From positions 1-64,000 of IMG/VR virus record IMGVR_UViG_3300035698_010479: a DNA stretch of 64,000 nucleotides. One strand, written 5' to 3'. Numbering within the stretch: the stretch's first letter is position 1; the number at the start of each line of letters is the position of its first letter. The translations under genes were made by a program, and so were the position numbers. Under the pieces are notes generated by a model. The model saw nothing but the letters and a program-made list of their open reading frames with translations, did no database searches and was not told the origin of the DNA. This document shows positions 8,694-63,373 of this stretch, one piece after another.

Positions 8694-8705
8694 AGGTGTC
8701 TTAAC

Positions 8706-9203: not shown

Positions 9204-9206
9204 TAT

Positions 9207-9364
9207 TAGAATGTGGCGGAATAAGTAGACGCTAGGAAAGTCGTTTAGAAAAAAGTAATTCGCTTGGCTAATACCCAAGAGGTAGGGATTAACGTACTCT
9301 AACGATGACAAAAGAATCCGAGGCATGTTAAAACCATATATGGTGTAAATCCATATCAGTCTAT
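9207..9364 (+). ncRNA. tRNA-like RNA with ~100-nt insert in place of a normal anticodon arm
   Basis: Acceptor TAGAATG/CAGTCTA; Leu-type D arm GTGGCGGAATAAGTAGACGC; T-like arm ATATGG-TGTAAAT-CCATAT. Confidence 0.5.
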
Positions 9365-9509
9365 TATTAATTAATAAGGAAAATTAAAAATGAAGGGGGG
9401 GGGGAGATGCTGACTAACCTCAGTAAGATCTTTAGTGGAGGTGGCCACCACACTAAGTAGCTGCAAAGCTGCCTCTCCTGAACTATTTAAAATAAAATAA
9501 TGGAGATTT

Positions 9510-10634
9510 ATGGACGAAATAATACTATATAAAAAATCAACAAAATCAGATAAGATACAATTTTGGGCAGTAAGTGTAGAGATGTCGGAAAATTTAAACA
9601 GTGCTATACTTGTTAGAAAAGCAGGTTTTTTAAATTTTAAAACAAAAGTAAATTATAAGGTAATTGATAAAGGAACAAACATAGGTAAGAAGAACGAAAA
9701 AACTCCCTATGAGCTAGCAGTGTTTAAAGCTAATAAAATGATAAAAGATCATTATGAGGATAATTATCATTTTTCATTGGATGATATTAATAAACCTATA
9801 GAGTTTATAAAACCAATGTTAGCAGAGCCATTTGACATTACAAAAATAATATTTCCATGTTATGCCCAGCCTAAAATGAATGGTGTTCGTTGTATCTCTT
9901 TAAGACATTTAAATGATCCTACCATGTGGTCAAGGCAGCGAAATGACTACACTGCAATAAAAGAAATAAAACAAGCTGTTGGTAAATATTTTGGGGTTAA
10001 CTCACCAGATGGCGAAATATATAATCCAGACGCAACGTTCCAAGAAATTATAAGGGCAGTAAAGAAAAGAAGCGAAGGCACTAAACATTTAAAAATGTGG
10101 ATATATGATCTAGCTATTCCTGACGTACCATTTTCAGAGCGTAATGCAATGATTATGGATATCTTTGAAACACAAAAAGATAATGGTATACTAGATTACT
10201 TTTTTGAAGTACCTACTGTAACGGTAAATTCATTTGAAGAACTGGATGCTTTACATGATAAATGGGTATTAGAAGGTTTCGAAGGCTTAATCCTTAGATT
10301 ACCTTCAGGACTCTACGAGTTCAACGAAAGAACTTTTAGTTTAATGAAATATAAAAAGTTTGTAGATGAAGAATTTGATATAATTGATTATGCGTGTGAA
10401 GTATGGTACGATGCTTTAAACGAAACATTTAGAGAATTAGTTATATGGAAATGTGTAACAGACGCCGGTGCAACTTTCGATGTTAGACCTGCTGGGTCTT
10501 TTTTATTGAGAGAAAAAGCATATAAAACTGCAGAAAAACAAATAGGTAAACCTTATACTGTTAAATTTCAAAACTATTCAGATGATGGTATACCGATATT
10601 TCCAATAGGACTAGCAATGAGAGATTACGAGTAA
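9510..10634 (+). CDS. ATP-dependent DNA ligase
   Basis: KPMLA, QPKMNGVR (motif I), DGEIY, IYD, EGLILR, MKYK, PIFP. Confidence 0.92.
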   Translation: MDEIILYKKSTKSDKIQFWAVSVEMSENLNSAILVRKAGFLNFKTKVNYKVIDKGTNIGKKNEKTPYELAVFKANKMIKDHYEDNYHFSLDDINKPIEFIKPMLAEPFDITKIIFPCYAQPKMNGVRCISLRHLNDPTMWSRQRNDYTAIKEIKQAVGKYFGVNSPDGEIYNPDATFQEIIRAVKKRSEGTKHLKMWIYDLAIPDVPFSERNAMIMDIFETQKDNGILDYFFEVPTVTVNSFEELDALHDKWVLEGFEGLILRLPSGLYEFNERTFSLMKYKKFVDEEFDIIDYACEVWYDALNETFRELVIWKCVTDAGATFDVRPAGSFLLREKAYKTAEKQIGKPYTVKFQNYSDDGIPIFPIGLAMRDYE

Positions 10635-10740
10635 AATAAGTAAAGTGAGAGGAAAGTACTGGCCTTTTATATTATCTTTAATAGTAAAAATAATATAAGT
10701 AGATTCAATTATCGCTTCTCTCAAAACATAGGTAATTAAC

Positions 10741-12069
10741 ATGATTATAGAACAAGAAATTATTGAAAGATTGTCTGGGGCAGGCTACCAAATTTTTATT
10801 GTTGGCGGCGCAATTAGAGACGAAATTTTAGGATTTGAACCACATGACATTGACTTTGCTACCAACGCAAAACCAGATGAAATTATACCATTGTTTAATG
10901 ATAAACATATTGGTATAGTTGGTAAGAGCTTTAAAGTAGTTTTTGTAGAAGGAGTACAAATAGCTACATTTAGAAAAGATACACAGAAGGTATTCTTCAG
11001 TTCCAAATATTGTGAACCTGAATATGCAGACACTATACAAGATGATTTAGCAAGAAGAGATCTTACAATTAACGCTATGGCTAAAAATGCTGTAACTGGA
11101 GAATTCTTTGATCTTTATAGTGGTGTAGAAGATTTAAAAGGAGGTATAATACGTTTAGTAGGAGATCCTATTGAACGTTTACGCCAAGATCCTAATAGAA
11201 TAGTACGGGCTTGTAGAATATTGGCAAAGACTGAGGGATACTTCGCTAAAGAAACTTATGCGGCACTATGTGAGTGTGCTATCTTTATAAAGCGCCACGT
11301 AGAGGCTGAGCGGCTCTGTGAAGAGATTTTGAAAGCTATGGAGGTCAAGACACCCTCATTGTTTTTTAGTGCTCTACACACAATTGGTGCCTTAAAATAC
11401 ATATTCCCTGCAATGGATGACTGCTTCTCACATATTGGTGGTCAATTTCATAAAGAAACAGTAGGTGAGCATTTAATGATGACAGGTGATATTATCTCAC
11501 CTAAATTTCCTATTCTACGGTTAGCTGGTTATCTTCACGACATTGGTAAGCCAAAAGCTTATGAGAAGGAGGGTGATGGTAGTTTCAAAGCTCACGAAGC
11601 TTACGGTGTAAACTTTGCCAGAGGATACTTGAAAAAGTTAAAATTTCCTAATAATATAACAAAAGAAATTCTTGGGTTGATTGACGCTCATATGAGAATA
11701 TGCAGAGGATTGACACCAAAGGGTACAAGAAGACTAAGAGTATATTTAGCTGATTCTGATGTAGACCCTAGAAGCTTTTTAAGATTAAAAATAGCTGATA
11801 GGTCGGCAAACATGTATAGATCTCCAAGCGAGATAGCACCTATAAAAGACTTAATAGTTGGTGCAGGTATCCGCTCTGTTGAACAGCCGGTATTGTCATT
11901 AAAAGATTTAGCTATGTCTGGTGGGGATTTAATTACCGAATTTAATATTCAGCCAGGGCCTGTAGTAGGAAGAATTCATAGAGCACTACTAGAATTTATA
12001 GTAGAAGAAGGTGAGGAGTTTAACACATATGAACAACTCAAGAACAAAGCAGAAGAGTTGTTAAAATAA
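10741..12069 (+). CDS. cca: CCA-adding enzyme / tRNA nucleotidyltransferase with HD domain
   Basis: VGGAIRD, DIDFAT, DLARRDLTINAMA, DPNRIVR, LHDIGK, PGPVVG. Confidence 0.9.
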   Translation: MIIEQEIIERLSGAGYQIFIVGGAIRDEILGFEPHDIDFATNAKPDEIIPLFNDKHIGIVGKSFKVVFVEGVQIATFRKDTQKVFFSSKYCEPEYADTIQDDLARRDLTINAMAKNAVTGEFFDLYSGVEDLKGGIIRLVGDPIERLRQDPNRIVRACRILAKTEGYFAKETYAALCECAIFIKRHVEAERLCEEILKAMEVKTPSLFFSALHTIGALKYIFPAMDDCFSHIGGQFHKETVGEHLMMTGDIISPKFPILRLAGYLHDIGKPKAYEKEGDGSFKAHEAYGVNFARGYLKKLKFPNNITKEILGLIDAHMRICRGLTPKGTRRLRVYLADSDVDPRSFLRLKIADRSANMYRSPSEIAPIKDLIVGAGIRSVEQPVLSLKDLAMSGGDLITEFNIQPGPVVGRIHRALLEFIVEEGEEFNTYEQLKNKAEELLK

Positions 12070-43618: not shown

Positions 43619-43691
43619 GGTGTCTGAAAGCAACCGGTGCGCTGCTTGGCTGTGACCCAAGTGCAAATGGGTTCGATTCCCATCGGACACA
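43619..43691 (+). tRNA. tRNA-His(GTG)
   Basis: G-1 + GTGTCTG/CGGACAC; CTTGG-CTGTGAC-CCAAG; ATGGG-TTCGATT-CCCAT. Confidence 0.8.
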
Positions 43692-47494: not shown

Positions 47495-47696
47495 CACGAG
47501 GTGTATATGCGTAGAAATAATGTAAAGAAAACAAAACATAATAAAATCAATCGGATGACTACTGATACTCTTACTGGTTTTATAAAAGAATTAGAAAAAG
47601 CAAATCAAGGTAATAGTAAAGTGTATGCTATGGCTATACAAACATTAGCATTATCCAAAAATAAAATTGTAAAATAAAACATATTAGGTGACCATT

Positions 47697-48350
47697 ATGA
47701 AAATGCTTATTCCTGTATTTTTATTAATATTCTTATTTTGTACACCAGCAATGGCTACTGTAATGAATTATGATGGTTGCCGGTATGATTGTCATGAAGA
47801 AAAAACAACTTACACAAAACGTTGGGATACTGTAAAAGAAATTAAACATACAGACATCGTGAAAGAAATGTTATATATTAATAGAACTTCTACACCAATA
47901 ATTGGTCCTAATGATATATTAAGACAATGTATTAACTATATTGAATACGATAAAATCAAAAATGGTGTCACTGCCGGAACAGTTACTGATTATACACTAA
48001 TAAACGGTAGAGTTGGTAATAAAAGTGGTGAAACCTTTGCTAGATGTGATGATCCTACAAATGAAAAATGGATTAAAAAATGGGTAGAGGAACTAGAAGT
48101 AGACAAAACTGTAACCTGGTCTGAATTTATTACAATACCAAATGAAGATTTATTTACTATAAGTAAGTGGGTATGTTTTCCACTAACTGAATCAGTGATT
48201 ACATATTTTCGTGGTGGTGGTGGGTATGATTATCCACATAACTATACACCACCAATAGGAAGTGCACCAGTACCGGAGCCATCTACAATATTGCTATTAG
48301 GGGTAGGTCTTTTAGGTTTTGCTTCCATAAGTAAATTTAGAAAGAAATAA
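47697..48350 (+). CDS. PEP-CTERM sorting-domain protein
   Basis: Signal peptide ending AMA; C-terminal APVPEPSTILLLGVGLLGFASISKFRKK. Confidence 0.85.
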   Translation: MKMLIPVFLLIFLFCTPAMATVMNYDGCRYDCHEEKTTYTKRWDTVKEIKHTDIVKEMLYINRTSTPIIGPNDILRQCINYIEYDKIKNGVTAGTVTDYTLINGRVGNKSGETFARCDDPTNEKWIKKWVEELEVDKTVTWSEFITIPNEDLFTISKWVCFPLTESVITYFRGGGGYDYPHNYTPPIGSAPVPEPSTILLLGVGLLGFASISKFRKK

Positions 48351-49136: not shown

Positions 49137-49370
49137 ATGAATAATAAGATATTAGATCTACATGGAGTAAAACACGAAGATGTAAAGCAATTAGTAATTA
49201 ACTTTATAGAGAATAACTGGACAATAGAAGAAAGTTTAGTTGTAGTTACAGGACATAGTAGAAAGATGAAAAATATTGTTATAGTAGTACTTAATGAGTA
49301 TAAATTACAGTATATACCTGGGGATATATTTAATGAATTAGCCCCTAAAATTATATTTTGGGTGAGATAA
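49137..49370 (+). CDS. Smr/MutS2-like domain protein
   Basis: ILDLHGV...VVTGHS. Confidence 0.75.
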   Translation: MNNKILDLHGVKHEDVKQLVINFIENNWTIEESLVVVTGHSRKMKNIVIVVLNEYKLQYIPGDIFNELAPKIIFWVR

Positions 49371-50014
49371 TGTTAGTAAAAACTTTTGTACATTTTGTAT
49401 GTTTGCTAGTTGTGATTAGTGTATTATCAATTGCAAAAGAAGTGCGGGCTATACCGATAGTAGAGACAGGGTCTCAGTGGGAATACACAATTCTAAATAA
49501 CGATTTGTGGCCTAACTGGTCATCCGTTAATTACAATTCTTTTGATTGGCAAGGTAATAGTCAGTGGTATACTGGTTCTGCTGCCTTCGGTAATGAATAT
49601 GCTGGCGGATTGGCCTTTAATACTTATTGGCAAGCGAACCAAGATATGGCTTTACAATATAATTTTAATGTAGACGGTATTATATCAGGGCCAATAACAT
49701 TGAACGTAGCTTCTGATAATGGGTTTCTTGTTTTCATCAACGGTACTCAGGTCGCTAAAGAAAATGCAGAAGGATACACCAAATATTGGGAATACACTTT
49801 GGACATATCCAGTTTTTCTGATGTATTTAGATCACAAGGAACCAATATTATACAGGTACTTGCTGAAGATCATGGTGTAGCTACGTTTTTCGATCTTCAA
49901 ATGAATGCTAATGTTTCTGCTGCACCAGTACCTGAACCAGCTACCTTTTTATTACTTGGAGCTGGTTTAGTTGGTCTGTCAACCATACGAAGAAAAAAGG
50001 TTAGTAAAACATAA
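49370..50014 (+). CDS. PEP-CTERM protein with beta-sandwich (PA14/galactose-binding-like) domain
   Basis: Signal peptide; W.TG.AAFG, SDNGFLVFING; C-terminal APVPEPATFLLLGAGLVGLSTIRRKK. Confidence 0.85.
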   Translation: MLVKTFVHFVCLLVVISVLSIAKEVRAIPIVETGSQWEYTILNNDLWPNWSSVNYNSFDWQGNSQWYTGSAAFGNEYAGGLAFNTYWQANQDMALQYNFNVDGIISGPITLNVASDNGFLVFINGTQVAKENAEGYTKYWEYTLDISSFSDVFRSQGTNIIQVLAEDHGVATFFDLQMNANVSAAPVPEPATFLLLGAGLVGLSTIRRKKVSKT

Positions 50015-50442: not shown

Positions 50443-50767
50443 GGGAGTGTGGTGGAACGGTATACACATGGGAGAGCTAGTAGCTCAGTCCCCCTCAAGT
50501 AGAAATACATGAGTAAACTGTGGGTTAATTCGGGAGAGTCTAAGTCGAAAGATAAGGCAATCGCGAGCCAAGCTGGAAATACATTTTCAGAAGGTGTACA
50601 GACTACTGGAGAGCTTGAGTGCTCTTAATAACCAGCTAGAACGCCCACTACCATAGCAGGTAATGCTGATGGTAAAGAGATAGTCGGTGTCTTTTAGAAA
50701 TAAAAGAACAACATGCTTAAAATCCCCCGGCAGTAATGCCGTAAGAGTTCGAATCTCTTCATTCCCA
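50443..50767 (+). tRNA. tRNA-Leu(TAA), intron-containing (exons 50443-50473 and 50716-50767)
   Basis: GGGAGTG/CATTCCC; spliced anticodon arm TGGGA-CTTAAAA-TCCCC; long variable arm; AAGAG-TTCGAAT-CTCTT. Confidence 0.82.
50474..50715 (+). mobile_element. group I intron (242 nt, no ORF) in tRNA-Leu(TAA)
   Basis: P AATTCGGGAG, Q AATCGCGAGC, R GTACAGACTA, S AAGAGATAGTC, P3 GTGGG/CCCAC, terminal G. Confidence 0.85.
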
Positions 50768-53038: not shown

Positions 53039-53329
53039 TTTTTATTTACAGTAGCAGTTACTAATGTAGGCATACATAAGTAAATGAACAGTTGCGGGGT
53101 CCGTAAACTCCAACTATGTAGAAAGTCATTACCGGACAAATACTTAATACATACTGATTGGGACTACTGTAAATAAATTCTTATTTGAATATGTTTTAAG
53201 CAACGAGTAGACGAAAAACACACGTAGGGAAACTTTGATAGGTAATAAGAAAATGCCTCAATAAACATAAGAGGACTTTCGTTGTATCTAAAAAGAACAA
53301 CCATAGTTAATCTACGTCGAAAGTTGTAT

Positions 53330-53416: not shown

Positions 53417-53546
53417 TGCTATTTAGTGTAACGGCAAGCACGCTAAAATCTCCTTATTAGATAGTTCCTCATCTCACGATGACGGTGTATAATATGGTTA
53501 CTTCTAATCATAATAGAGAAGACTGGTTCGACTCCAGAAATAGCGA
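53417..53546 (+). ncRNA. Y-RNA-like element B (tRNA-framed form)
   Basis: Acceptor TGCTATT/AATAGCG, D arm, T arm CTGG-TTCGACT-CCAG; insert CCTTATTA-GATAGTTCC...CGGTGTA-TAATATGG-TTACTTC. Confidence 0.7.
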
Positions 53547-53561
53547 CCGTAGTTAAGACTT

Positions 53562-53708
53562 TGATCTGTAGCTCAGTTGGTAGAGCAGCTGTTTAAAAAA
53601 GCCTGTTTTTGTTTATTCCTCCTTTCTCCTCCTTCGTTGTGGACGGTGTAAAAAACAGATACTTCAATATGGCATAGCGGGTCATGGGTTCGAGTCCCAT
53701 CGGATCAA
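53562..53708 (+). ncRNA. Y-RNA-like element C (tRNA-framed form)
   Basis: TGATCTG/CGGATCA, TAGCTCAGTTGGTAGAGC, ATGGG-TTCGAGT-CCCAT; insert CTGTTTTT-GTTTATTCC...CGGTGTA-AAAAACAG-ATACTTC. Confidence 0.72.
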
Positions 53709-54020
53709 TAATTGTGTTTAAGTATACCAAATATTAGGGTGCGGTTGGTTTCGAAAGCCAATGAATCTAATTGAGAGCGGCGGAAAATACAGCGAGATGA
53801 GTTCGTGGTATACTTTATTATTTTAAATTAAGGAATTTATATGAGATACGATGATGATTTAACTGTAAAAGCTGTAAAAGAGTGGGGCCTTAAACATTTT
53901 GATTGGCCTATTCAAGTATACGATTGTAACCAAAATTTCGTAGTTACAAGCCGTAAACATGTAGTAACTGTACGTAAAAATTGTGGTACAGTTGATGTAT
54001 GTGACAAGATAGAAACATAA

Positions 54021-54093
54021 TGCGGGTTAGAGAAACGGTCATCTCGCTAGGCTCATATCCTGGAAACAACCTGTTCAACTCAGGTACCCGCTA
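54021..54093 (+). tRNA. tRNA-Met(CAT), initiator-like
   Basis: 1:72 mismatch (T/T); CTAGG-CTCATAT-CCTGG; ACCTG-TTCAACT-CAGGT. Confidence 0.78.
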
Positions 54094-54101
54094 AAATAAA
54101 T

Positions 54102-54192
54102 TTAAAACTTGAATGGTGAATAGTATGGTTACTTCTATAGACTCTTAATCTAACCAAAAAAAACCTTACTAGCTAGTTCCTTCAGGTTTTAA
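54102..54192 (+). ncRNA. Y-RNA-like element D (short form)
   Basis: TTAAAACTTGAA/TTCAGGTTTTAA stem; TGGTGAA-TAGTATGG-TTACTTC ... CCTTACTA-GCTAGTTCC. Confidence 0.68.
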
Positions 54193-54222
54193 TACCTCTT
54201 TAATTAAAACACGTAGTATATC

Positions 54223-54290
54223 TAGGGTGGTGAATAGCACAGTTACTTCACTGTAAATGAAAAAACAACTGTACTAGTTTGTTCCCTCTA
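54223..54290 (+). ncRNA. Y-RNA-like element E (short form), just upstream of Ro60
   Basis: TGGTGAA-TAGCACAG-TTACTTC ... CTGTACTA-GTTTGTTCC. Confidence 0.68.
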
Positions 54291-54315
54291 ATTTTGTGTT
54301 AAAGGAGAAAACACA

Positions 54316-55761
54316 ATGTCAAAGTTAAATAGAACAGTTCCGCAAATTAAAACTTTTAATGGCGCAGTAGCAAAACACATTTCTCCAGAAGCAATGCTAA
54401 GACGTTCTATAATGTCTTGCTTGTTATGGGAAAAAGAATTTTATGAGAGTGGTTCAACTATCGCACAACGTATTGAAAATCTCGTACCTCAAGTAGACCC
54501 AATGGTTGTAGCCGACCTCGCTATACTTGCAAGAACAAGGATGAATCTCAGACATGTACCATTGTTGATCATTAATACAATGTTAAAATTCACTGAACAT
54601 AGAAAATATGTCAGAGAAGTTATTAATCATGTTGTTAATCGTCCTGATGAAATGGGTGAACTTCTAACAATGTATTTTGGTGGTGGTACAAAAAATAAAC
54701 CCCTTGCAAATGCATTGAAAAAAGGTCTTGCTGATGTATTCTGTAAATTTAACGAGTACCAGTTGGCCAAGTATAATCGCGATGCGGCTATAAAATTACG
54801 TGATGTTCTATTTCTTACTCACGCAAAACCTGTAGATAACCAACAAGCAGTTCTTTGGAAAAAGCTTATAGGTGGATTTTGTAAAAATTGTGGTCAAAGT
54901 CATTACAATAAAGATACTAAGTGTATCGACGATAATTCAACAACAACCGATTGTTCACAGTATGATGAATTGGTACTGGCTACACCTGACACATGGGAAG
55001 TAGCGTTAAGTTCTGGTGGTGATAAGACCGCTCATTGGACACGTCTTCTGTCTGAAGGAAAGTTGGGCGCTCTGGCACTACTACGTAACTTACGTAATAT
55101 GCAGACAGCTGGTATTGAAAAGGATAAAATCGCAGATGCTTTTCAAAAAACTGACTTGAGTAAAGTACTACCTTATAGATACATTGCTGCAGCTAGATAC
55201 GCACCAAGTCTTGAGGGTGTGCTTGAAGAAGGTATGTTTAGAAGTCTGAAGGGTTATCAAAAAATGGAAGGTCATACTGTGCTATTAATTGACGTTTCCG
55301 GTAGTATGGATTGGGCACTTTCGGATAAATCTGATTTACGTAGGATTGATGCTGCGTGTGGTCTTGCAATGTTACTTCGTGAGACATGTGAAAAAGTAGA
55401 TATTTTTACATTCAGCACAAAACTGGTAGAAGTAGCACCAAGAAGAGGTTTTGCTCTGCGTGATGCTATAGTTGGTAGTCAAAACCATAGCTCTACATAT
55501 CTTGGAAAAGCTATTAAAGCTTTATTTTCAAACGATAGAAGTGAAAGTGCTTTTAAAGGCCGTAATCTTTCACCAAATCGTCTTATTGTTATTTCAGATG
55601 AGCAATCAAATGACAAAGTACCTGACCCAAAATGTGTTAGCTATATGATAAATGTAGCTTCTGCTAAAAACGGTGTTGGTTACGGGGCGTGGAATCATGT
55701 AGATGGCTTTAGTGAAGCAGTTGTACAATGGATTCAAGAATTGGAAAATGATAAAAAATAA
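54316..55761 (+). CDS. rsr: Ro60/TROVE-domain RNA-binding protein with vWA domain
   Basis: LWEKEFYESG, AR..MNLRH.P, RPDE, YQLAKY, PDTWE..LS, ALLRNLRN, LPYRY, DVSGSM (MIDAS), ISDEQ, GFSE. Confidence 0.93.
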   Translation: MSKLNRTVPQIKTFNGAVAKHISPEAMLRRSIMSCLLWEKEFYESGSTIAQRIENLVPQVDPMVVADLAILARTRMNLRHVPLLIINTMLKFTEHRKYVREVINHVVNRPDEMGELLTMYFGGGTKNKPLANALKKGLADVFCKFNEYQLAKYNRDAAIKLRDVLFLTHAKPVDNQQAVLWKKLIGGFCKNCGQSHYNKDTKCIDDNSTTTDCSQYDELVLATPDTWEVALSSGGDKTAHWTRLLSEGKLGALALLRNLRNMQTAGIEKDKIADAFQKTDLSKVLPYRYIAAARYAPSLEGVLEEGMFRSLKGYQKMEGHTVLLIDVSGSMDWALSDKSDLRRIDAACGLAMLLRETCEKVDIFTFSTKLVEVAPRRGFALRDAIVGSQNHSSTYLGKAIKALFSNDRSESAFKGRNLSPNRLIVISDEQSNDKVPDPKCVSYMINVASAKNGVGYGAWNHVDGFSEAVVQWIQELENDKK

Positions 55762-56100
55762 GTTATTTTAAATATGTGATACAAGTAGCTAGAGCCTAAC
55801 AAACTCTGGCTACTAAAGTATGTTACTACCATGTCATAATAGAGATTGACAAATTGTGATTATATGAGTATTGTGTATTTATTATTTCAGTAAGACTACT
55901 GGCAATAGTATTACTGAGCTTTTTAAGACTAAACGACAAGATAACAAGATGGACTTTTACATAAGTCATGCACAATCATCGCGATTACGCTACGACAAAG
56001 TAAACTCCTAGTTTGAGTCAGACAGTTTAAGCAACTAGGTTGAATGGGATAGGGTGGGTAATTTTTTATCATTAAAGATTAATTTAATACTTGGAGTTAT

Positions 56101-56424
56101 ATGGAAAGAGACCTTTGTGATTTGATGGCTAATGGTGGTGATTACTTCAATGAAACTAGCTATAATACAGAAGATGAGTATAGTAACAACAGATCCTTTG
56201 ATAGTAGGGATCTTGGAACTGCTATGACTTTTGGCGATATGCTAGCAGAAGAACGGTCATTATCTGACTTATTAGATTTTTCGGATGACCCAGCTGAGCT
56301 ATTAGAAGCGATAGAAGCAGAACATAATCAAGATAAAATACAACGTATAAGTCTCAAAAGCAGGCAAGCAGATGTACCAGCATTTGAACAATACGTTTAT
56401 CAAAAATGTGGAATAACTAGATAA
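56101..56424 (+). CDS. acidic hypothetical protein
   Basis: GGAG RBS; 107 aa. Confidence 0.55.
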   Translation: MERDLCDLMANGGDYFNETSYNTEDEYSNNRSFDSRDLGTAMTFGDMLAEERSLSDLLDFSDDPAELLEAIEAEHNQDKIQRISLKSRQADVPAFEQYVYQKCGITR

Positions 56425-56606
56425 TGCCTATTTATAATTATGAATGTAAGTGTGGGAAACAGTACGAATCAATGCAACGAATGGATACTAAAACAATTAT
56501 CTGTACGTGCGGTGAACAAGCTAAAAAAGTACCATCCCTATCTAATTTTCATTTAAAAGGTGGAGGTTGGGCTAAGGAAGGTTATAGTAATGGCTCAAAA
56601 AAGTAG
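56424..56606 (+). CDS. FmdB-family zinc-ribbon protein
   Basis: MPIYNYECKCG...CTCG...S...F.LKGGGW. Confidence 0.8.
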   Translation: MPIYNYECKCGKQYESMQRMDTKTIICTCGEQAKKVPSLSNFHLKGGGWAKEGYSNGSKK

Positions 56607-56904
56607 TTGTAAGTACGAAAATAATATGTTAAACTTGACTATAGGTAAACGATATAAATTTACTATTTTTGCGCATAACACACCTATAGTTGGTACAATA
56701 ATAATAAAAAATGTACGTGATGCAACACATCATTCTTACTGGGTGTCGTGGTGGAGTGAGGAAAGAAAACAAAACATAGGACATTATATTTTTGATTGTG
56801 GTTACGCAAATATGCACAGAACTATTGTATATAATATGCATAGCATAAGAACTTGTATCGAAGTGTCTCCTAGTTCAGATGCTTCTAAATGTTGAGAGGA
56901 TAAA

Positions 56905-57435
56905 ATGGCACTAATTGAAGACGCCATATTGTTTGCAGAAGAAGCTCATAGAGGTATGAAAAGGAAATTTGACGGTACTGCCTATATAAGACATCCTTTA
57001 TCAGTGATGGGTATATTATCTGGTTACTATTCACAACCTGAAGTACTGGCTGCTGGTGTTATACATGATACAGTAGAAGACTGTGAAGATGTTACATTGG
57101 AAGTAATCCATGAACGCTTTGGTGAAATAGTAGCTGGTTATGTATTTTATGTATCTGAGAAGTCAAGAAAAGATGATGGTAACAGGAAAGTTAGAAAAGC
57201 TATAGACTTAATACACTATAGTAAGGGTGGTTCAGTATCACAAGATATAAAACTTGCAGACATGTTAGATAACATTCCTTCAATGGTATTATTTAATCCA
57301 GTTTTTTCAAAAGTATATTTGGATGAGAAAATGCAATTATTAGGAGTATTGACAAAAGGTAATGTGGAATTAAAAAGTTTAGCTTTAAAATTAGTTACAA
57401 ACATGTTCGTACTCATAAATGATATAAAAATATAG
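56905..57435 (+). CDS. stand-alone HD hydrolase, (p)ppGpp hydrolase (SAH/Mesh1)-like
   Basis: AEEAH.G..RK..G..YI.HP, IHDTVED, RFG..VA, IKLAD.LDN. Confidence 0.85.
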   Translation: MALIEDAILFAEEAHRGMKRKFDGTAYIRHPLSVMGILSGYYSQPEVLAAGVIHDTVEDCEDVTLEVIHERFGEIVAGYVFYVSEKSRKDDGNRKVRKAIDLIHYSKGGSVSQDIKLADMLDNIPSMVLFNPVFSKVYLDEKMQLLGVLTKGNVELKSLALKLVTNMFVLINDIKI

Positions 57436-57447
57436 TAATCTAAATAA

Positions 57448-57576
57448 GACCAGTTAGCTCAACGGTAGAGCATTAAGCCACCTTATTAGCTAGTTCCCTA
57501 TGTAAATAGCGGTGTATAGTATGGTTACTTCTCTTATGATAAAAGAAAGATAAAGGTTCGAATCCTTTGCTGGTCA
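57448..57576 (+). ncRNA. Y-RNA-like element F (tRNA-framed form)
   Basis: GACCAGT/GCTGGTC, TAGCTCAACGGTAGAGC, AAAGG-TTCGAAT-CCTTT; insert CCTTATTA-GCTAGTTCC...CGGTGTA-TAGTATGG-TTACTTC. Confidence 0.72.
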
Positions 57577-57740: not shown

Positions 57741-58460
57741 ATGAAAGAAGAAACTGTAATAGATATTCTAGATATGAATTACCCTTTGCTTGTTAATTTT
57801 AAAGCAGCAGCACAGGGTACCTTTGCCCACAGTAAAGTGCTTTCAGACATACTAGAAAAGATTGGCAACGCTTTAGGTCTTAATAGTCGTTTATTAAAAA
57901 CTATAGGGCTTTATCATGATATAGGAAAAAGTATTACACCAATGCTGTATTCAGAGAACCAACCTGCCGATTTTAACCCTCATGATAAGCTTGAAGCATG
58001 GATATCTTTTGCTCTAGTTGCTGGACATGTAGCACACTCAGTACAAATACTTCTGACTGATCCAAACGTGCCTAAAGAGGTAGTCACTATATGTTCTCAA
58101 CATCATGGAACTACCCTTGCCTTGTACTTCTTTAAAAAGAGTGGAAGTACTGATGAAAATGAATTCAGATATAAAACACAGAGACCACAATCATTTGAAG
58201 CTGCTTTGTTAATGATTTGCGATCATCTAGAAGCTCGTATTAGATCTGAAATTAATAGTGGTAGAATTACCAACCAGGAGGGTATAGAGAATCTCGTTGA
58301 ATTAGTTTTTAATCATTTGGTGGATGATAATCAATTTGATGATGTTGTGGTTCCTAGTTTTAAAACACTTCGTAAACTAAAAATAGTTTTAAAAGAAGAG
58401 TTTTCAGAGCTTTTTAAAGATCATAAACGTATTGATTATACACAAGACACTGAAAAGTAA
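57741..58460 (+). CDS. stand-alone HD phosphodiesterase resembling the PgpH (7TM-HD, c-di-AMP PDE) catalytic domain
   Basis: A.GTF.HS, YHDIGK, ENQ, NPHD, QHHGTT, YFF, FRY..RPQS.EAALLM.CD..EA. Confidence 0.8.
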   Translation: MKEETVIDILDMNYPLLVNFKAAAQGTFAHSKVLSDILEKIGNALGLNSRLLKTIGLYHDIGKSITPMLYSENQPADFNPHDKLEAWISFALVAGHVAHSVQILLTDPNVPKEVVTICSQHHGTTLALYFFKKSGSTDENEFRYKTQRPQSFEAALLMICDHLEARIRSEINSGRITNQEGIENLVELVFNHLVDDNQFDDVVVPSFKTLRKLKIVLKEEFSELFKDHKRIDYTQDTEK

Positions 58461-58643: not shown

Positions 58644-59540
58644 ATGAAAGAAAAACAAAATGCAGATGTAGGCGTAGTAATTGGTCGTTTTCAAGTAGAC
58701 GATCTCCACGAAGGTCATCTAAATCTACTTTCTACAGTAGAACAATCACACAGTAGACTTATAATCTTTATAGGTTTATCTTCATGTAAATGTACTTATA
58801 ACAATCCACTTGACTTTGAGTCGAGGCGAGCTATGTTACAAATACATTATCCAAAAGCAACCATCCTTTACATTAAAGACGTACATGACGACCTGTTTTG
58901 GTCTAAAGATCTCGATAATAAAATATCAGGTTTATTAGGTCCTGGTCAGACAGTCTGTCTTTATGGTAGTAGAGATTCATTTATTCCCTATTATCATGGT
59001 AAACTACCAGTAAGAGAGCTTGTTCAAGAAACTTATTTCTCAGGTACGGAGGTTCGTAAACAAGTAGCTATTAGATCCAATTCTTCTAGAGACTTTAGAG
59101 CTGGTGCTATATGGGCGCTAGGTAATCAGTATCCTTCTCCTAATTTTACAATTGATGTCGCTATATTTGATGATAATTTCACTCGAATTCTTCTTGGAAG
59201 GAAAGTGAAAGAAACAAAATATAGACTGATAGGTGGCTTTATTCAAAACTCTGAGAAGATTTCTGATGCAGTCGCAAGAGAAGCACTGGAAGAAACTCAT
59301 CTAGTATTAAATAATATTAAATACATTGATAGCTTCCCTTCAACTGATTGGCGTTACCGTAGCGAAAGAGATAAGATTACCACCATACTTCATACAGCAA
59401 CAATAAAATCAGGTGTGCCTGAACCGGATGATGACATCCATGAACTTCGTTGGTTTGATTTTAACAACGATATACTAGATCTAATTGTCCCCGAACATCT
59501 TGATATGCTAACTGTATTACTAAAGCTGTCAAGAAGTTAA
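58644..59540 (+). CDS. bifunctional NMN adenylyltransferase / Nudix (ADP-ribose pyrophosphatase), NadM-Nudix/NatV-like
   Basis: IGRFQ...HEGH, NPL....R, SGTEVR; Nudix box GGF...E....AV.REALEET. Confidence 0.9.
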   Translation: MKEKQNADVGVVIGRFQVDDLHEGHLNLLSTVEQSHSRLIIFIGLSSCKCTYNNPLDFESRRAMLQIHYPKATILYIKDVHDDLFWSKDLDNKISGLLGPGQTVCLYGSRDSFIPYYHGKLPVRELVQETYFSGTEVRKQVAIRSNSSRDFRAGAIWALGNQYPSPNFTIDVAIFDDNFTRILLGRKVKETKYRLIGGFIQNSEKISDAVAREALEETHLVLNNIKYIDSFPSTDWRYRSERDKITTILHTATIKSGVPEPDDDIHELRWFDFNNDILDLIVPEHLDMLTVLLKLSRS

Positions 59541-59817
59541 CAATGTTATAGGAGGATTATGAAACAAATAAAAATAAAGGAAGTAGTACTACCAATAAAA
59601 GTACCATCAGGTAAATATTGTTGGGAGCATCATATATCTGGCACTTGTAATTATTTTGATAATGAAGGAGGACACTCTTCTTGTGAATTAAAATTTCACT
59701 GCCAAAAAGATACTAAGCAGGGTGTTTTAAAAGATCCAGCATGTGCGGCGTTAGTAGATGTCTTGATTATTGATAATATATCATAAATTATTTGTCTTCA
59801 TCCAAGGTACTTACTAA

Positions 59818-60009
59818 ATGAAAACATACAAAGAAAGAAAAGAAGAAAGAAAAAAGCAGTACGAAAAACATGAGTTCGGTTGGCGTTCCCGTAAGTGTGG
59901 TGCCTGTGATGGTGCCGGTTACTACGACTATAACGGTTCACCTCCTTGTGGTGCCTGTGAAGGTACAGGTAAGGAGAAGTATACAGGACCAAAAATCTCC
60001 ATTCTATGA
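59818..60009 (+). CDS. small DnaJ-type zinc-finger protein
   Basis: CGACDGAG ... CGACEGTG. Confidence 0.65.
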   Translation: MKTYKERKEERKKQYEKHEFGWRSRKCGACDGAGYYDYNGSPPCGACEGTGKEKYTGPKISIL

Positions 60010-60045
60010 CCCGAAAGATGTTATGGACTGGTAAATATTAATTTA

Positions 60046-60072
60046 TTCTTAGATGCGTTGATGCAAGGAGAA
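60046..60072 (+). promoter_or_regulatory. RBS-sequestering motif, copy 2 (before NAMPT)
   Basis: TTCTTAGATGCGTTGATGCAAGGAGAA; TTCTT can pair with AAGGA. Confidence 0.45.
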
Positions 60073-60077
60073 AAATT

Positions 60078-61409
60078 ATGAGTAAGAGAAATGTAGTATT
60101 CACAACAGATAGTTATAAAGTTAGTCACTGGTTGCAGTTTCCTAAAAACGAAGGGTCATATTATTATATAGAATCTCGTGGCGGGGCAGAAACAGTGTTG
60201 TTTTATGGGCTTCAGATGATTATAAAAAAGCTTTTAGATCGTGTTCCAACTAAAGCTGAAGTTGAACGTGCTGCTAAATCATGGACTGAACATGGGGTTA
60301 CTTTTAATAAGAATGGATGGATGGCCCTATCTGAGCTTGGTTATTTCCCTATCGAAATTAAAGCTGTTGAAGAAGGTAAACTGGTTGGGACTAAAGAAGT
60401 ACAAGTAACTATTGAATCCACAGACAAACGGTTTGGTTGGTTACCTGGTTGGTTAGAAACTCGACTTTTACAGTTGTGGTATCCTACTACTGTTGCAACT
60501 AAACAATTTGAATGCAAGAAGATTATTATAAATTATCTAAATAAAACTGGTACTCCAGAAGATGCACCGTTTAAACTTCACTCCTTCGGCTACAGGGGTG
60601 CAAGCTCTGAAGAGTCAGCAGGCGTCGGAGGTTCTGCTGAACTTCTTACATCTATGGGTACAGATACAATTGTAGGAGTCTACACTGCACAGGATTATTA
60701 TAACACTGATGCTATGTTAGGCTTTAGTATTAATGCATCAGAACATAGCACTATAACTGCGTGGGGAAGAGAATTTGAAAAGGATGCATATGAAAATATG
60801 CTTGACCAATTCTTGAAGCCTGGTGCTATACTAGCTTGCGTGTCTGATAGTTATGACCTTAGTAAAGTAATACTTGAGTACTGGGGACGTGAGTTCAAGG
60901 ATAGGATTGTAAAATCTGGTGCTACTTTGGTAGTGCGTCCTGACTCAGGTGATCCTGTAACTATAGTACTTAGATCTTTGGAACAATTACGTTCAAGTTT
61001 TGGTGTAACTACAAACGACAAAGGTTATATGGTACTGCCTAATTGTGTAAGACTTATCCAAGGTGATGGTCTTGATGGGCCTGCAGAAATTGAAGCGATT
61101 CTTGCTGCAATGGAAGCTGTTGGTTGGTCTGCAGATAATATTGCTTTTGGTATGGGAGGTGGTTCTTTACAACAACTAAATCGTGATACATATAAATACG
61201 CTATGAAAATGTCCTCAATACTAGTTGATGGTGAGTGGCGGGATGTATATAAGCAACCTGCTGATGCTGCATGGAAAATTAGCAAGAAGGGGAGATTTGA
61301 TAATTTAAATCTTCCAACCGTATGGAAGGACGGAGTATTCATCCGTGAATATACTTTTGAGGAAGTACGAGCTAACGCTATGGAGGAACTCGAAAAAGTT
61401 TGCAGTTAA
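60078..61409 (+). CDS. nadV: nicotinamide phosphoribosyltransferase
   Basis: TDSYK.SH..Q.P, YIESRG, WYPTTVAT, LH.FG.RG, GTDT, ASEHS, VSDSYD, RPDSG.P, IQGDG, FGMGG..LQ..NRDT, KISKKGR. Confidence 0.93.
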   Translation: MSKRNVVFTTDSYKVSHWLQFPKNEGSYYYIESRGGAETVLFYGLQMIIKKLLDRVPTKAEVERAAKSWTEHGVTFNKNGWMALSELGYFPIEIKAVEEGKLVGTKEVQVTIESTDKRFGWLPGWLETRLLQLWYPTTVATKQFECKKIIINYLNKTGTPEDAPFKLHSFGYRGASSEESAGVGGSAELLTSMGTDTIVGVYTAQDYYNTDAMLGFSINASEHSTITAWGREFEKDAYENMLDQFLKPGAILACVSDSYDLSKVILEYWGREFKDRIVKSGATLVVRPDSGDPVTIVLRSLEQLRSSFGVTTNDKGYMVLPNCVRLIQGDGLDGPAEIEAILAAMEAVGWSADNIAFGMGGGSLQQLNRDTYKYAMKMSSILVDGEWRDVYKQPADAAWKISKKGRFDNLNLPTVWKDGVFIREYTFEEVRANAMEELEKVCS

Positions 61410-61979
61410 ATAATGTGTTGACGATACAAAATATCGTTAATTCAGAGGGCGCAGAAGGAAGTGTAATAAATGACAAGATTATATTGTACTTTGAGTGCCT
61501 GATGGTGTCGCCGAGGAGGTAAGCATTATGTGGGTCTGTCAAACCTTTATCTATGATACCGGCGATGCCGCATCTTATAGGAGTACTTATGGGATTTGCT
61601 GAAATTAAAAAGAAAGAAACACCATTACCACGTTATAAAAATACAGTTGTATGTCATAAATGTCACGCAGAATATAATAAAGATGTTCAATTTGTAAAAG
61701 GTATTACAGTATCTAGTAATACTGGTACTGACCTCGGTGACTTTATACCACTTGCTACAATAAGAATTGGTACTTGTCCTATGTGCTCAACAAGTGAAAA
61801 GATAACTTTATGAAAACAAAGACATCTAAGATATTAGAAACAGTTGATGTAATAGCCGGAAAAAGCTATCATCAGGGCACCTTTGCTAGCATTTCACATA
61901 AGTACCCTAGTGACTTTAGTAGAATGAGTAAAGAAATAAGTGAGCTACGTAAAAAGCTTGTTGATATGCTAGCAGATGA

Positions 61980-62012
<33 letters not shown>

Positions 62013-62162
62013 TCAAGTACTGGTCTCTAGAAGTTGTTGAGTTTAAAGTTAAACCACATAATAAAAGACCAAATTCAATATATAAGGACTCTAAAACATC
62101 AGGTCATATTACTAAATCAGGTGTTGGTATGGTAGGTAAACTAATTAAAAAAGGCTAATATT

Positions 62163-62912
62163 ATGCACTCACCGTTAAAATACTGTACTAAGGGTGTACC
62201 ACTACCAAATTATTTAATTGACGGACCAGAGCGTGTTTTAAACGTTTCTGAAGCTAATGTGGAAGTAGTTTACGGAGGTGATGGTTCAGTACTTCGTGGA
62301 GTACAAGGTATAGTAAAGAACAATGTACCAGACGTTCTAATACTTGGTATTAATACTGGACACGTTGGCTTCTTATCAAACGATATTAGTAAAGAACAAG
62401 CATTAGCTTTCCTTACCAATCCTAATGAGGCCCTTATTGAGAAGCGTAATATGTTACGTATAAGCAATAATGATACTGTATGGTATGCACTTAATGAAAT
62501 AGTAATTCAACCACTAAAAAGAGGACCATTATTTGAAACGCTGCTTAAAGTTGACAATGATGATTTAGTATATAAGGGAGATGGCTTGATAATTTCTACT
62601 CCTTCTGGTAGTACTGCTTATAATCTATCTGCTGGAGGACCTATTATACATCCAAGTACCAACGTGCTTGGTATTACACCTATATGCCCATTTTCTCTCG
62701 CTGCACGGCCTATTGTAGTACCGAATTCTGTAAAACTTCTTGTTAATACTTCTGCCGATGCTGAAATAACTATAGATGGTGTATCAGTGTTCGTTGGAGT
62801 ACTAAAGAATATGTCGATAGATCTTGCAGCATTTACTATAAATTTAGTTAAGTTTGACTCGTTTTTTGAGGCAATACATAATAAACTTGGGTGGAACTAC
62901 TCTATACGGTGA
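62163..62912 (+). CDS. nadK: NAD(+) kinase
   Basis: GGDGSVL, GINTG.VGFL, ALNE, GDGLIISTPSGSTAYNLSAGGP, PICP.SL..RP, IDG. Confidence 0.93.
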   Translation: MHSPLKYCTKGVPLPNYLIDGPERVLNVSEANVEVVYGGDGSVLRGVQGIVKNNVPDVLILGINTGHVGFLSNDISKEQALAFLTNPNEALIEKRNMLRISNNDTVWYALNEIVIQPLKRGPLFETLLKVDNDDLVYKGDGLIISTPSGSTAYNLSAGGPIIHPSTNVLGITPICPFSLAARPIVVPNSVKLLVNTSADAEITIDGVSVFVGVLKNMSIDLAAFTINLVKFDSFFEAIHNKLGWNYSIR

Positions 62913-62917
62913 CTAGT

Positions 62918-63373
62918 ATGATACAACTTATAAACGAAGATATTCTTGGTAACTTAGATACAAATAAACAAAAAACAATTATTCTTCATGGGTGTAATTG
63001 TTTCCACACAATGGGTTCTGGTATTGCTAAATACTTAAGAGCCAAATTTCCAAAGGTTTACACAGTAGATATTACTACTACTAAACGTGGTGATAAATCA
63101 AAGCTTGGTACTTTTAGTACAGCAATCATTGAGGATAGATTTGTAATACTTAATTGTTATACACAATTCAGATATGGTAGAGATAACATCCTGTATGCTA
63201 ACTATGCAGCTATAGAAAAATGTTTTAGACAGGTGGCTTTGCAGTATGATAATTCATGGGAAGTACGGCTTCCAAAAATAGGGTGCGGATTGGCAGGTGG
63301 TGATTGGAATATTGTAGGGCCATTGTTGATGATGCATTTAAACAATCATAGTACTAAAGTTTATTATAAGTAA
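62918..63373 (+). CDS. macro domain protein (ADP-ribose processing, TARG1/Poa1-like)
   Basis: HGCNCFHTMGSGIA, NCYTQ, PKIGCGLAGGDW. Confidence 0.9.
   Translation: MIQLINEDILGNLDTNKQKTIILHGCNCFHTMGSGIAKYLRAKFPKVYTVDITTTKRGDKSKLGTFSTAIIEDRFVILNCYTQFRYGRDNILYANYAAIEKCFRQVALQYDNSWEVRLPKIGCGLAGGDWNIVGPLLMMHLNNHSTKVYYK

What the first reader, a model, noticed from the sequence alone, without database searches (positions are those of the whole stretch)
53502..57546. Y-like RNAs display different anticodon stem-loops: candidate decoy panel against anticodon nucleases
Seen: at or just after the TTACTTC motif, four elements carry a 4-5-bp stem with a 7-nt loop of anticodon form (T at loop position 2, AA at 6-7): B TTCTA-ATCATAA-TAGAG (CAT, 53502-53518), D TAGA-CTCTTAA-TCTA (CTT, Lys, 54138-54152), E TTCA-CTGTAAA-TGAA (GTA, Tyr, 54247-54261), F TCTT-ATGATAA-AAGA (GAT, Ile, 57532-57546). 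D and E have no other tRNA parts. Known: tRNA-Lys, -Tyr and -Met are targets of antiphage and toxin nucleases (PrrC, PARIS AriB, retron PtuAB, VapC). Inference: Ro60-tethered anticodon baits that titrate or trap such nucleases, or recruit synthetases and modification enzymes.
Basis: partly seen in the sequence, partly recalled or inferred. Interest (0 to 1): 0.85.

Follow-up and report, generated by a model that had tools for sequence, protein, structure and literature searches.

The report
Anticodon-like arms on phage Y RNAs
Five small RNA genes around this phage's Ro60 gene are YrlA-type Y RNAs; four carry a hairpin that copies the tRNA anticodon arm with a fast-changing triplet, a trait shared with bacterial RNA-repair operons, and three are rearranged into true tRNA order, but their proposed role as decoys for anticodon nucleases is untested.

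Summary
Their support is comparative. Across about 190 Ro60 loci this arm sits in tRNA register: 17 nt, then a 5-nt AGGUC loop, then the T arm. In 35 equal-length copies U33 occurs in 33, a purine at 37 in 35, A38 in 27, and the closing pair covaries. The triplet turns over quickly while this frame stays fixed. Bacterial yrlA-rsr-rtcB operons have the same arm, so it is not a phage invention. Window elements B, C and F are circular permutations of YrlA in tRNA order, with free acceptor ends. Three permuted copies in other phage contigs encode CCA. D and E are minimal Y RNAs. The decoy idea has published precedent but no direct support here. Verdict: a new variant of a known kind.

The parts
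53417..53546 (+). Element B: YrlA-type Y RNA in tRNA order. Acceptor 5' strand 53417-53423, U8A9, D arm 53426-53441, linker GCUAAAAUCU 53442-53451, Ro-helix 3' strand 53452-53468, closing loop 53469-53483, Ro-helix 5' strand 53484-53497, UUAC 53498-53501, anticodon-like arm 53502-53518, short variable loop, T arm 53522-53538, acceptor 3' strand 53539-53545, A73, then CCG.
   Evidence: Read. The inserted helix folds alone. 7/7 acceptor pairing to the upstream partner, which is followed by UA and the D arm. The L002 orthologue has the same layout and linker.
53502..53518 (+). B arm: 5-bp stem, loop AUCAUAA (triplet CAU).
   Evidence: 5 contiguous bp in tRNA register. The L002 orthologue keeps the stem through two compensatory changes and keeps UCAUAA, but its loop is 8 nt.
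53562..53708 (+). Element C: tRNA-order YrlA without a separate arm. The Ro-binding hairpin (about 53603-53658, followed by AUAC-UUC) replaces the anticodon loop between stem strands GCUGU and AUAGC.
   Evidence: Rfam tRNA hit, 49 bits, with a 77-nt insertion in the anticodon loop. The helix folds alone, z -1.8.
54108..54190 (+). Element D: minimal Y RNA. Terminal stem, internal loop, Ro helix (5' strand 54115-54128, 3' strand 54164-54180), apical loop with UUAC and the arm, then a U run.
   Evidence: MFE and centroid folds agree. Motifs found.
54138..54152 (+). D arm: 4-bp stem, loop CUCUUAA (triplet CUU).
54222..54292 (+). Element E: minimal Y RNA immediately upstream of the Ro60 start. 5' strand 54229-54242, UUAC 54243-54246, 3' strand about 54267-54285.
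   Evidence: Fold. Motifs.
54247..54261 (+). E arm: 4-bp stem, loop CUGUAAA (triplet GUA). A UUAC/GUAA pairing competes with it.
54316..55761 (+). Ro60 orthologue (TROVE plus vWA domains), 481 aa.
   Evidence: Pfam TROVE 2.7e-20 and Ro60 vWA. Matches phage phiLo Ro60 structures 9L5Y/9KOP at 9e-26. 228 viral and more than 566 bacterial relatives found.
57448..57576 (+). Element F: YrlA-type Y RNA in tRNA order. Acceptor 57448-57454, D arm 57457-57471, linker, Ro 3' strand 57481-57497, loop, Ro 5' strand 57511-57524, UUAC 57525-57528, arm, variable loop, T arm 57552-57568, acceptor 3' strand 57569-57575, A73.
   Evidence: Rfam tRNA hit, 43.9 bits, with a 71-nt insertion. 7/7 acceptor pairing.
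57532..57546 (+). F arm: 4-bp stem, loop AUGAUAA (triplet GAU).
   Evidence: 4 contiguous bp in tRNA register.

Best explanation
The hairpins are the anticodon-arm part of the tRNA mimicry of YrlA-family Y RNAs. Shown: five Y-RNA genes (B-F) flank a Ro60 gene. Each has the conserved two-strand helix (G-G-Y-G-A/U-A... paired with ...U-N-G-U-U-C-C) followed by YUAC. In four, the next element is a hairpin at the 'V' stem-loop position of YrlA. Across the family this hairpin is a 5-bp/7-nt arm followed by a 5-nt AGGUC loop and the T arm, which is class-I tRNA geometry. Positions 32, 33, 37 and 38 are conserved, and positions 34-36 are free to change. Inferred: Ro60 binds the helix and displays a complete tRNA look-alike. 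A tRNA-recognising partner reads the shape of the anticodon loop (U-turn frame) rather than a particular triplet. In bacteria this belongs to the RtcB RNA-repair setting. B, C and F are circular permutations, probably from tandem duplication and trimming. They open the acceptor stem and close the Ro helix, so they should be matured like tRNAs by RNase P, 3' trimming and a CCA-adding enzyme (the phage encodes one). D and E keep only the Ro helix and the arm.
For: Identity: TROVE ORF. Motifs and layout are shared with 26 and then about 160 further Ro60 loci. YUAY, the V stem-loop and GNCGAAN0-1G are described for YrlA. Arm in tRNA register: 67 of 96 unique elements close a 7-nt loop with at least 3 bp (shuffle mean 29, max 42), and 53 also have U33 and R37 (shuffle mean 3.9, max 10). 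With no register choice (n=35): U33 33/35, R37 35/35, A38 27/35, Y32 32/35, AGGUC 23/35; among the 26 with all three inner stem pairs formed, U36-A37 17/17 and G36-G37 5/5. Covariation: pair 31-39 has 15 double changes, score 0.390 against 0.160 in shuffles (0/500), and slid controls give 0.06-0.13. Short Y RNAs: a 7-nt loop is best in 30.8 against a shuffle mean of 5.8. Triplets are shared only among near-identical loci, and four alphaproteobacterial copies have an identical scaffold with four different triplets. RtcB lies next to Ro60 in L119, L132 and L158. tRNA finders and GenBank call the 5' parts of these RNAs tRNA-Gln, -Ser, -Asn or -Thr through this arm. Permutation. Encoded CCA in L057, L059 and L002. 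Phage CCA-adding enzyme at 10741-12069.
Against: No expression, binding or processing data exist for this uncultured phage. The window's own hairpins are thermodynamically insignificant and have competing pairings. About a third of tRNA-like copies lack the form (6- or 8-nt loops, triloops), as do C, crAss001 and Rhizobium phage TM30. U36 is enriched (38/55), 36/37 are coupled, and A34 is rare, so the triplet is not wholly free, which a pure shape-reading partner does not explain. The nearly invariant UUC suggests a further constraint, possibly alternative pairing with the GAAG of the 5' strand. The elements were found with my own regular expressions rather than an independent model. The Salmonella YrlA whose structure is solved has no such arm.
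Confidence: 0.6

Rival explanations
1. One reading: the arms are Ro60-tethered baits that titrate, trap or competitively inhibit anticodon nucleases of host defence systems, and different triplets cover different nucleases.
For: The arms have a faithful anticodon-loop frame with tRNA-like 36/37 coupling and few A34. Several genomes carry multiple copies with different triplets. Triplets turn over fast in a fixed frame, as an arms race would predict. Bacterial copies sit beside RtcB, which reseals broken anticodon loops. Hughes 2020 proposed that YrlA competitively inhibits an anticodon nuclease. The window's neighbours look like a counter-defence island, with NAD salvage and Macro genes. Phage tRNAs are known to counter PARIS.
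Against: No nuclease link was tested. The arm is present in bacterial chromosomes, so it is not a phage counter-defence invention. Turnover is equally compatible with neutrality, because Ro60 synonymous sites would be saturated at these distances. Some triplets are not natural anticodons. The stems share a nearly invariant UUC instead of copying target tRNAs. Known nucleases often need base modifications that cannot be assessed here. C and many copies lack the arm.
Confidence: 0.17
2. The arm is a vestige: the leftover anticodon arm of the first tRNA in the dimeric-tRNA ancestor of YrlA, with no present function.
For: The dimeric-tRNA origin model predicts an anticodon arm exactly here. ARAGORN still scores the 5' parts as tRNAs. 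Triplets drift freely. Some lineages have lost the form.
Against: Loop length, U33, R37, A38 and stem pairing (with compensatory changes) persist from actinophages to proteobacteria, while the triplet and Ro60 synonymous sites are saturated. That indicates purifying selection on the frame. The arm also persists in minimal Y RNAs that lost every other tRNA part.
Confidence: 0.1
3. B and F, and the CCA-encoding copies elsewhere, are working or chargeable tRNAs (Met/Ile-CAU, Ile-GAU) that carry a Ro60-binding insertion. This would link Ro60 to aminoacylation or translation.
For: They have 7-bp acceptor stems with free ends, a discriminator base, D and T arms, an anticodon arm and a variable loop. 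CCA is encoded in L057, L059 and L002. The phage has a CCA-adding enzyme. M. smegmatis YrlA is cut by RNase P and receives CCA.
Against: A 44-77-nt insertion sits between the D arm and the anticodon arm. ARAGORN rejects them. Arms are weak, 4-5 bp and AU-rich. Triplets in relatives include non-anticodons. A 55-kDa ring bound at the elbow side would probably block ribosome entry (inference).
Confidence: 0.07
4. The hairpins are chance AU-rich pairings.
For: Their energies are indistinguishable from shuffles.
Against: Position statistics in the window and register, composition and covariation in homologues all argue against chance.
Confidence: 0.01

Closest known systems
YrlA (Y RNA-like A) of bacteria and phages (Chen et al. 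2014, PMC4201824; Wang et al. 2018, bioRxiv 312249)
   Same: Encoded next to Ro60 on the same strand. Has the 5' Ro-binding strand motif, the conserved YUAY, the V stem-loop upstream of the T arm, and tRNA-like T and D arms. Phage copies are known.
   Different: The accessible literature equates V with the tRNA variable arm and says YrlA lacks an anticodon loop. Here V is in anticodon-arm register, with a conserved loop frame and a variable triplet. B, C and F have the opposite topology (open acceptor, closed Ro helix). The window's 5' motif reads GGUG(A/U)AUAG rather than the strict GNCGAAN0-1G.
Circularly permuted tRNA genes of red algae and archaea (Soma 2007, cited), and two-piece permuted tmRNA
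   Same: The same tRNA-shaped RNA exists in two gene orders related by circular permutation.
   Different: In those cases the permuted form is a precursor processed back into a tRNA. Here canonical YrlA is the permuted order, and B, C and F restore tRNA order while keeping the Ro module. No circular intermediate is implied.
Thermus phage phiLo Ro60 with Yrl1/Yrl2 (PMC12135203)
   Same: A phage Ro60 with two adjacent Y-like RNAs. It is the closest solved Ro60 by sequence. The authors propose hijacking of host PNPase to evade defence.
   Different: Those Yrls are described as stem-bulge-stem RNAs with a CGAA motif. No tRNA-like module or anticodon-like arm is reported.
b7a-tRNA and the Ro/tRNA-like RNA-repair platform (Burroughs and Aravind 2016, as cited)
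   Same: A tRNA-looking RNA encoded with RNA-repair genes, sometimes next to Rsr. crAss001 has a band-7/SPFH gene near its TROVE gene.
   Different: I could not read that paper, and b7a-tRNA is reported as unvalidated. Whether it carries a Ro-binding insertion is unknown to me.
Nuclease-resistant phage tRNAs (T5 tRNA-Lys against PARIS; van den Berg 2023)
   Same: Phage-encoded anticodon stem-loops that matter in conflicts with host anticodon nucleases.
   Different: Those are working tRNAs that replace cleaved host tRNAs. They are not Ro60-bound mimics or decoys.

Membership tests
YrlA-type Y RNA | Encoded within about 4 kb of a Ro60/TROVE gene, on the same strand | tested here: met
   B-F lie 24-1800 nt from ORF 54316-55761, all on the + strand.
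YrlA-type Y RNA | 5' strand motif GNCGAAN0-1G | tested here: inconclusive
   Window copies read GGUGAAUAG (D, E), GGUGUAUAR (B, F) and GGUGUAAAA (C), with U in place of C and two N. Aligned relatives read GGCGAAG (a strict match) or GGCGUAG.
YrlA-type Y RNA | Conserved YUAY that begins the V region | tested here: met
   UUAC in B, D, E and F, and AUAC in C. TTAC is nearly invariant in 79 aligned relatives.
YrlA-type Y RNA | tRNA-like T arm and D arm | tested here: met
   Met for C and F by Rfam tRNA hits of 49 and 43.9 bits, and for B by reading. D and E have neither, so they are YrlB-like or minimal Y RNAs.
YrlA-type Y RNA | [quoted passage not shown] | tested here: not met
   B, C and F have the D arm upstream and the T arm downstream, open 7-bp acceptor stems and a closed Ro helix. 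Most relatives do meet it. B, C and F are therefore a topological variant, not canonical members.
YrlA-type Y RNA | Bound by Ro60; carries pseudouridine-55 and dihydrouridine | not testable with these tools
   Needs immunoprecipitation and modification mapping.
Generic Y RNA layout | 5' and 3' ends pair into a stem holding the Ro-binding bulged helix, with an apical effector loop | tested here: met
   Folds of D and E show it. The helix strands covary between D, E and relatives (read).
tRNA (RF00005) | Cloverleaf with acceptor, D and T arms | tested here: met
   C and F pass the Rfam gathering score, as do L057 and a second L059 copy. B fits by reading only.
tRNA (RF00005) | Anticodon arm contiguous with the D arm (one nucleotide between them) | tested here: not met
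   A 44-60-nt Ro module lies between the D arm and the arm in B and F. In C, 77 nt replace the loop. ARAGORN does not call them.
tRNA (RF00005) | Aminoacylation and decoding | not testable with these tools
Anticodon-nuclease decoy (functional class) | Displays the loop determinants of a nuclease's target tRNA | tested here: inconclusive
   The generic loop frame is present. The host tRNAs and nucleases are unknown, and the stems do not copy particular tRNAs.
Anticodon-nuclease decoy (functional class) | Binds or is cut by the nuclease and protects the phage | not testable with these tools
   Needs biochemistry and plaque assays.
Circularly permuted tRNA gene | The 3' half is encoded upstream of the 5' half and is processed through a circular intermediate | tested here: not met
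   B, C and F are in normal tRNA order. It is canonical YrlA that has the T arm before the D arm.

The most novel reading that the evidence does not exclude
The YrlA 'V' hairpin is a bait for enzymes that act on anticodon loops. Its triplet is under diversifying selection because it reports on, or blocks, anticodon nucleases in bacterial RtcB repair operons and in phages alike. The tRNA-order copies (with encoded CCA in some phages) are matured, possibly even charged, as Ro60-tethered tRNAs. A phage carrying four different triplets would then hold a real panel of baits.
Probability: 0.15. Interest if true: 0.85.

Novelty: new variant of a known kind. Interest (0 to 1): 0.62.

Why it matters
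What the tRNA-like module of bacterial and phage Y RNAs binds, and what Ro60 does in RNA-repair operons, has been open since 2014. The module often includes a faithful anticodon arm with a conserved frame and a fast-changing triplet. That narrows the candidate partners to proteins that touch the anticodon loop: nucleases, RtcB-type ligases, and position-37 modification enzymes. It also gives simple mutants to test, namely loop size, U33, and triplet swaps. The tRNA-order copies with open, CCA-ended acceptor stems are a natural experiment on whether a free 3' end matters. On the practical side, these RNAs are being annotated as ordinary tRNAs in phage genomes (CcrColossus 'tRNA-Gln', Gurke 'tRNA-Ser'), which distorts phage tRNA inventories.

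Tried and rejected
Rfam at gathering and at E<=1 gave no Y-RNA or YrlA family hit, only tRNA. Megablast against the phage collection found nothing. A 2-mismatch search for GGTTACTTC was uninformative, with 188 hits against 180 expected. RNAfold MFE is a poor detector of these weak AU-rich hairpins, since many fold as open chains, so I used register-fixed counting instead. MAFFT shifted rows of unequal length, so the formal pair count used only the 35 equal-length rows. My first topology classifier was fooled by tandem copies and was replaced by an acceptor-pairing test. My first Ro60 ORF picker dropped most bacterial loci and was redone with BLAST. The promoter and terminator scans showed no enrichment. 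Three items are not held in the library: the Sim and Wolin 2018 review, the 2020 Annual Review, and the Burroughs and Aravind 2016 research paper. The Chen 2014 supplements are not held either. I therefore cannot exclude that the anticodon-like nature of V, or tRNA-order copies, is mentioned there. I considered that F keeps E. coli tRNA-Ile identity pairs, but dropped the idea because C29-G41 follows from the nearly invariant UUC in all copies.

Full report
**Setting.** The window is the first 64 kb of a 228-kb IMG/VR phage contig. It is AT-rich and carries at least nine tRNA genes and a group I intron. ORF 54316-55761 is a Ro60 orthologue with TROVE and vWA domains. Its closest solved relative is the Thermus phage phiLo Ro60. 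No close DNA relative exists among isolated phages.

**Observation.** The four hairpins are at the stated coordinates, and each loop reads N-U-NNN-A-A. Hairpins of this form occur about once per kb on the + strand, so finding one in the few bases after the motif in four of five motif-bearing elements is not a positional accident. The 3'-strand signature TWGTTCC occurs on the + strand only at B, D, E and F. The hairpins are energetically trivial, at -0.2 to -1.9 kcal/mol and no better than shuffles, and B and E have competing pairings. The window alone therefore cannot prove them.

**What the elements are.** Chen et al. 2014 define YrlA RNAs as follows: a 5' GNCGAAN0-1G strand; a conserved YUAY that begins a less-conserved 'V' stem-loop; then the T arm, a closed acceptor-like hairpin and the D arm; with the ends paired in the Ro-binding stem.
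- A motif scan of 26 related viral loci found the same 5' strand, UUAC-UUC and hairpin next to Ro60 on the same strand. Most copies were in canonical YrlA order, and others were short Y RNAs like D and E.
- D and E fold as a terminal stem, internal loop, helix and apical loop.
- In the window, B and F carry the same strands in the opposite order: acceptor 5' strand, D arm, the shared CUAAAAUYU linker, Ro 3' strand, a closing loop, Ro 5' strand, UUAC, hairpin, variable loop, T arm, acceptor 3' strand. C is similar, but its Ro module replaces the anticodon loop.
- Rfam scores C and F as tRNAs with 77- and 71-nt insertions.
- The 7 nt after the T arm pair 7/7 with an upstream partner that is followed directly by UA and the D arm.
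- The same tRNA-order layout occurs in the L002 orthologue of B, and in two unrelated contigs, L057 and L059 (the latter with two tandem copies).
- Three of those copies encode CCA after the discriminator.
- The phage encodes a CCA-adding enzyme.
- Tandem canonical YrlAs are common (for example L006), so duplication followed by trimming is a simple route to the permutation. This is an inference.

**Is the hairpin really anticodon-like?** I aligned Ro60 proteins and fetched 80 viral and 80 bacterial loci.
- Anchoring only on the T arm, 67 of 96 unique tRNA-like elements close a 7-nt loop with at least 3 bp in tRNA register (shuffle mean 29, max 42). Of these, 53 also have U33 and a purine at 37 (shuffle mean 3.9, max 10).
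- In the 35 elements whose YUAC-to-T-stem distance is exactly 22 nt, no register choice is involved. There, U33 occurs in 33, R37 in 35, A38 in 27 and a pyrimidine at 32 in 32, and the next five bases are AGGUC in 23. Among the 26 of them whose three inner stem pairs all form, U36 goes with A37 in 17/17 and G36 with G37 in 5/5.
- The formal count gives 88% paired cells and 15 double changes at the loop-closing pair. The covariation score is 0.390 against 0.160 in shuffles (0/500), and the slid controls collapse.
- Short Y RNAs prefer a 7-nt loop after UAC-UUC: 30.8 against a shuffle mean of 5.8.
- A34 is rare (6/67) and U36 is enriched.
- ARAGORN and GenBank annotators call these stretches tRNA-Thr, -Gln, -Ser or -Asn through this arm.
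- The arm is also present in Gordonia phage Trax, at about 25% Ro60 identity, and in a Microcystis phage. It is not of anticodon form in crAss001 or Rhizobium phage TM30.
- The geometry (arm, 5-nt loop, T arm) is that of the anticodon arm, not of a class-II variable arm. This fits the dimeric-tRNA origin model, with the arm being the first tRNA's anticodon arm.

**Triplets.** Loci share a triplet in 4/5 pairs at 90% or higher Ro60 identity, in 6/27 at 75-90%, and at chance level below that. Four alphaproteobacterial copies have an identical scaffold with loops CU-GAU-AA, CU-CAU-AA, CU-AUU-AC and CU-UUG-GA. This is a variable patch in a conserved frame. At these distances neutral sites are saturated, so neutrality and diversifying selection cannot be separated.

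**Not phage-specific.** L119, L132 and L158 have RtcB immediately downstream of Ro60 (L119 also has a cellular neighbour), so they are chromosomal repair operons.

**Function.** The literature offers three relevant statements.
- Ro60 with a tRNA-like partner is described as an RNA-repair platform.
- The effector of YrlA is expected to be a tRNA-binding protein.
- YrlA may competitively inhibit an anticodon nuclease, although Salmonella YrlA lacks the loop and is not cut.

My best reading is a complete tRNA mimic displayed by Ro60 to a partner that reads loop shape. The decoy model remains possible (about 0.15-0.2) and is now sharply testable.

**Context.** Next to F are a SpoT-like HD hydrolase and an HDIG protein. 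Downstream are a NadM/Nudix-like protein, NAMPT, NAD kinase and a Macro-domain protein. This fits an auxiliary or counter-defence island, but no RNA ligase or kinase lies beside Ro60.

**Limits.** Elements were found with my own patterns. Some reviews and supplements could not be read. Nothing is known about expression.

Noticed in passing
L188 1673-1740 (Caulobacter phage CcrColossus); L194 2284-2358 (Brevundimonas phage Gurke); L189 2285-2355 (Xanthomonas phage Olaya); L026 6339-6412; L015 4420-4491: GenBank records or ARAGORN call 'tRNA-Gln', 'tRNA-Ser', 'tRNA-Asn' and 'tRNA-Thr' here. These stretches are the 5' parts of YrlA Y RNAs (Ro 5' strand, anticodon-like arm, T arm), so phage tRNA inventories are inflated.
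   Followed up: partly
L057 2235-2359; L059 3953-4075 and 4089-4217; L002 about 3272-3402: tRNA-order (permuted) YrlA copies occur in other phage contigs. Three encode N73-CCA. L059 has two in tandem, one with an anticodon-form arm and one without.
   Followed up: partly
window 58644-63373: A run of NAD-related genes: a NadM-type adenylyltransferase/Nudix fusion, NAMPT, NAD kinase and a Macro-domain protein. It resembles phage NAD+ salvage used against NAD-depleting defences (from my own knowledge). Gordonia phage Trax also has a nicotinate ribosyltransferase and a nucleotidyltransferase just upstream of its Ro gene.
   Followed up: partly
window 7959-12069: A calcineurin-type phosphoesterase, an ATP-dependent ligase-domain protein and a CCA-adding enzyme lie in a row. 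This may be a nucleic-acid end-healing and tRNA-maintenance cassette.
   Followed up: no
window 56905-57435 and 57741-58460: Element F sits between a 176-aa SpoT/RelA-type HD hydrolase domain protein and a 239-aa HDIG protein.
   Followed up: partly
window 53045-53175: A structured intergenic RNA closed by a 10-bp stem (z -3.0, 1 of 200 shuffles as stable). It has no Y-RNA motifs and no Rfam match.
   Followed up: no
window 53720-53815: Another RNA closed by a 10-bp stem. It contains a T-arm-like hairpin, UUGGU-UUCGAAA-GCCAA, near 53743-53759. It might be a further tRNA-related or YrlB-like RNA.
   Followed up: no
window 50469-50707: Rfam finds a group I intron (65.6 bits) between ORFs and tRNA genes. 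Its host gene was not identified.
   Followed up: no
window 43620-43691: A tRNA found by Rfam (45.5 bits) but not called by ARAGORN, directly after tRNA-Gln.
   Followed up: no
window 47688-48350 and 49358-50014: Two phage ORFs end in PEP-CTERM sorting motifs, which is unusual for a phage and may hint at the host group.
   Followed up: no
window 17421-39282: A cluster of phiEco32-like COOH-NH2 ligases, glutamine amidotransferases and an ATP-grasp protein.
   Followed up: no
alignment A3, columns 5-7 (all loci): The UUC that starts the arm is nearly invariant (33/35, 35/35, 35/35) even though its partners vary. It is also complementary to the GAA of the 5' strand motif (GAAG with CUUC; GUAG with UUAC). 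This allows a D-arm-like alternative fold that ARAGORN exploits. Unexplained.
   Followed up: no
L190 6125-6323 (crAss001); L194 5860-6205; L021 8493-8852: crAss001 has an SPFH/band-7 gene about 2.3 kb from its TROVE gene. Brevundimonas phage Gurke carries a permuted tmRNA, and L021 carries a tmRNA, both near Ro60.
   Followed up: no
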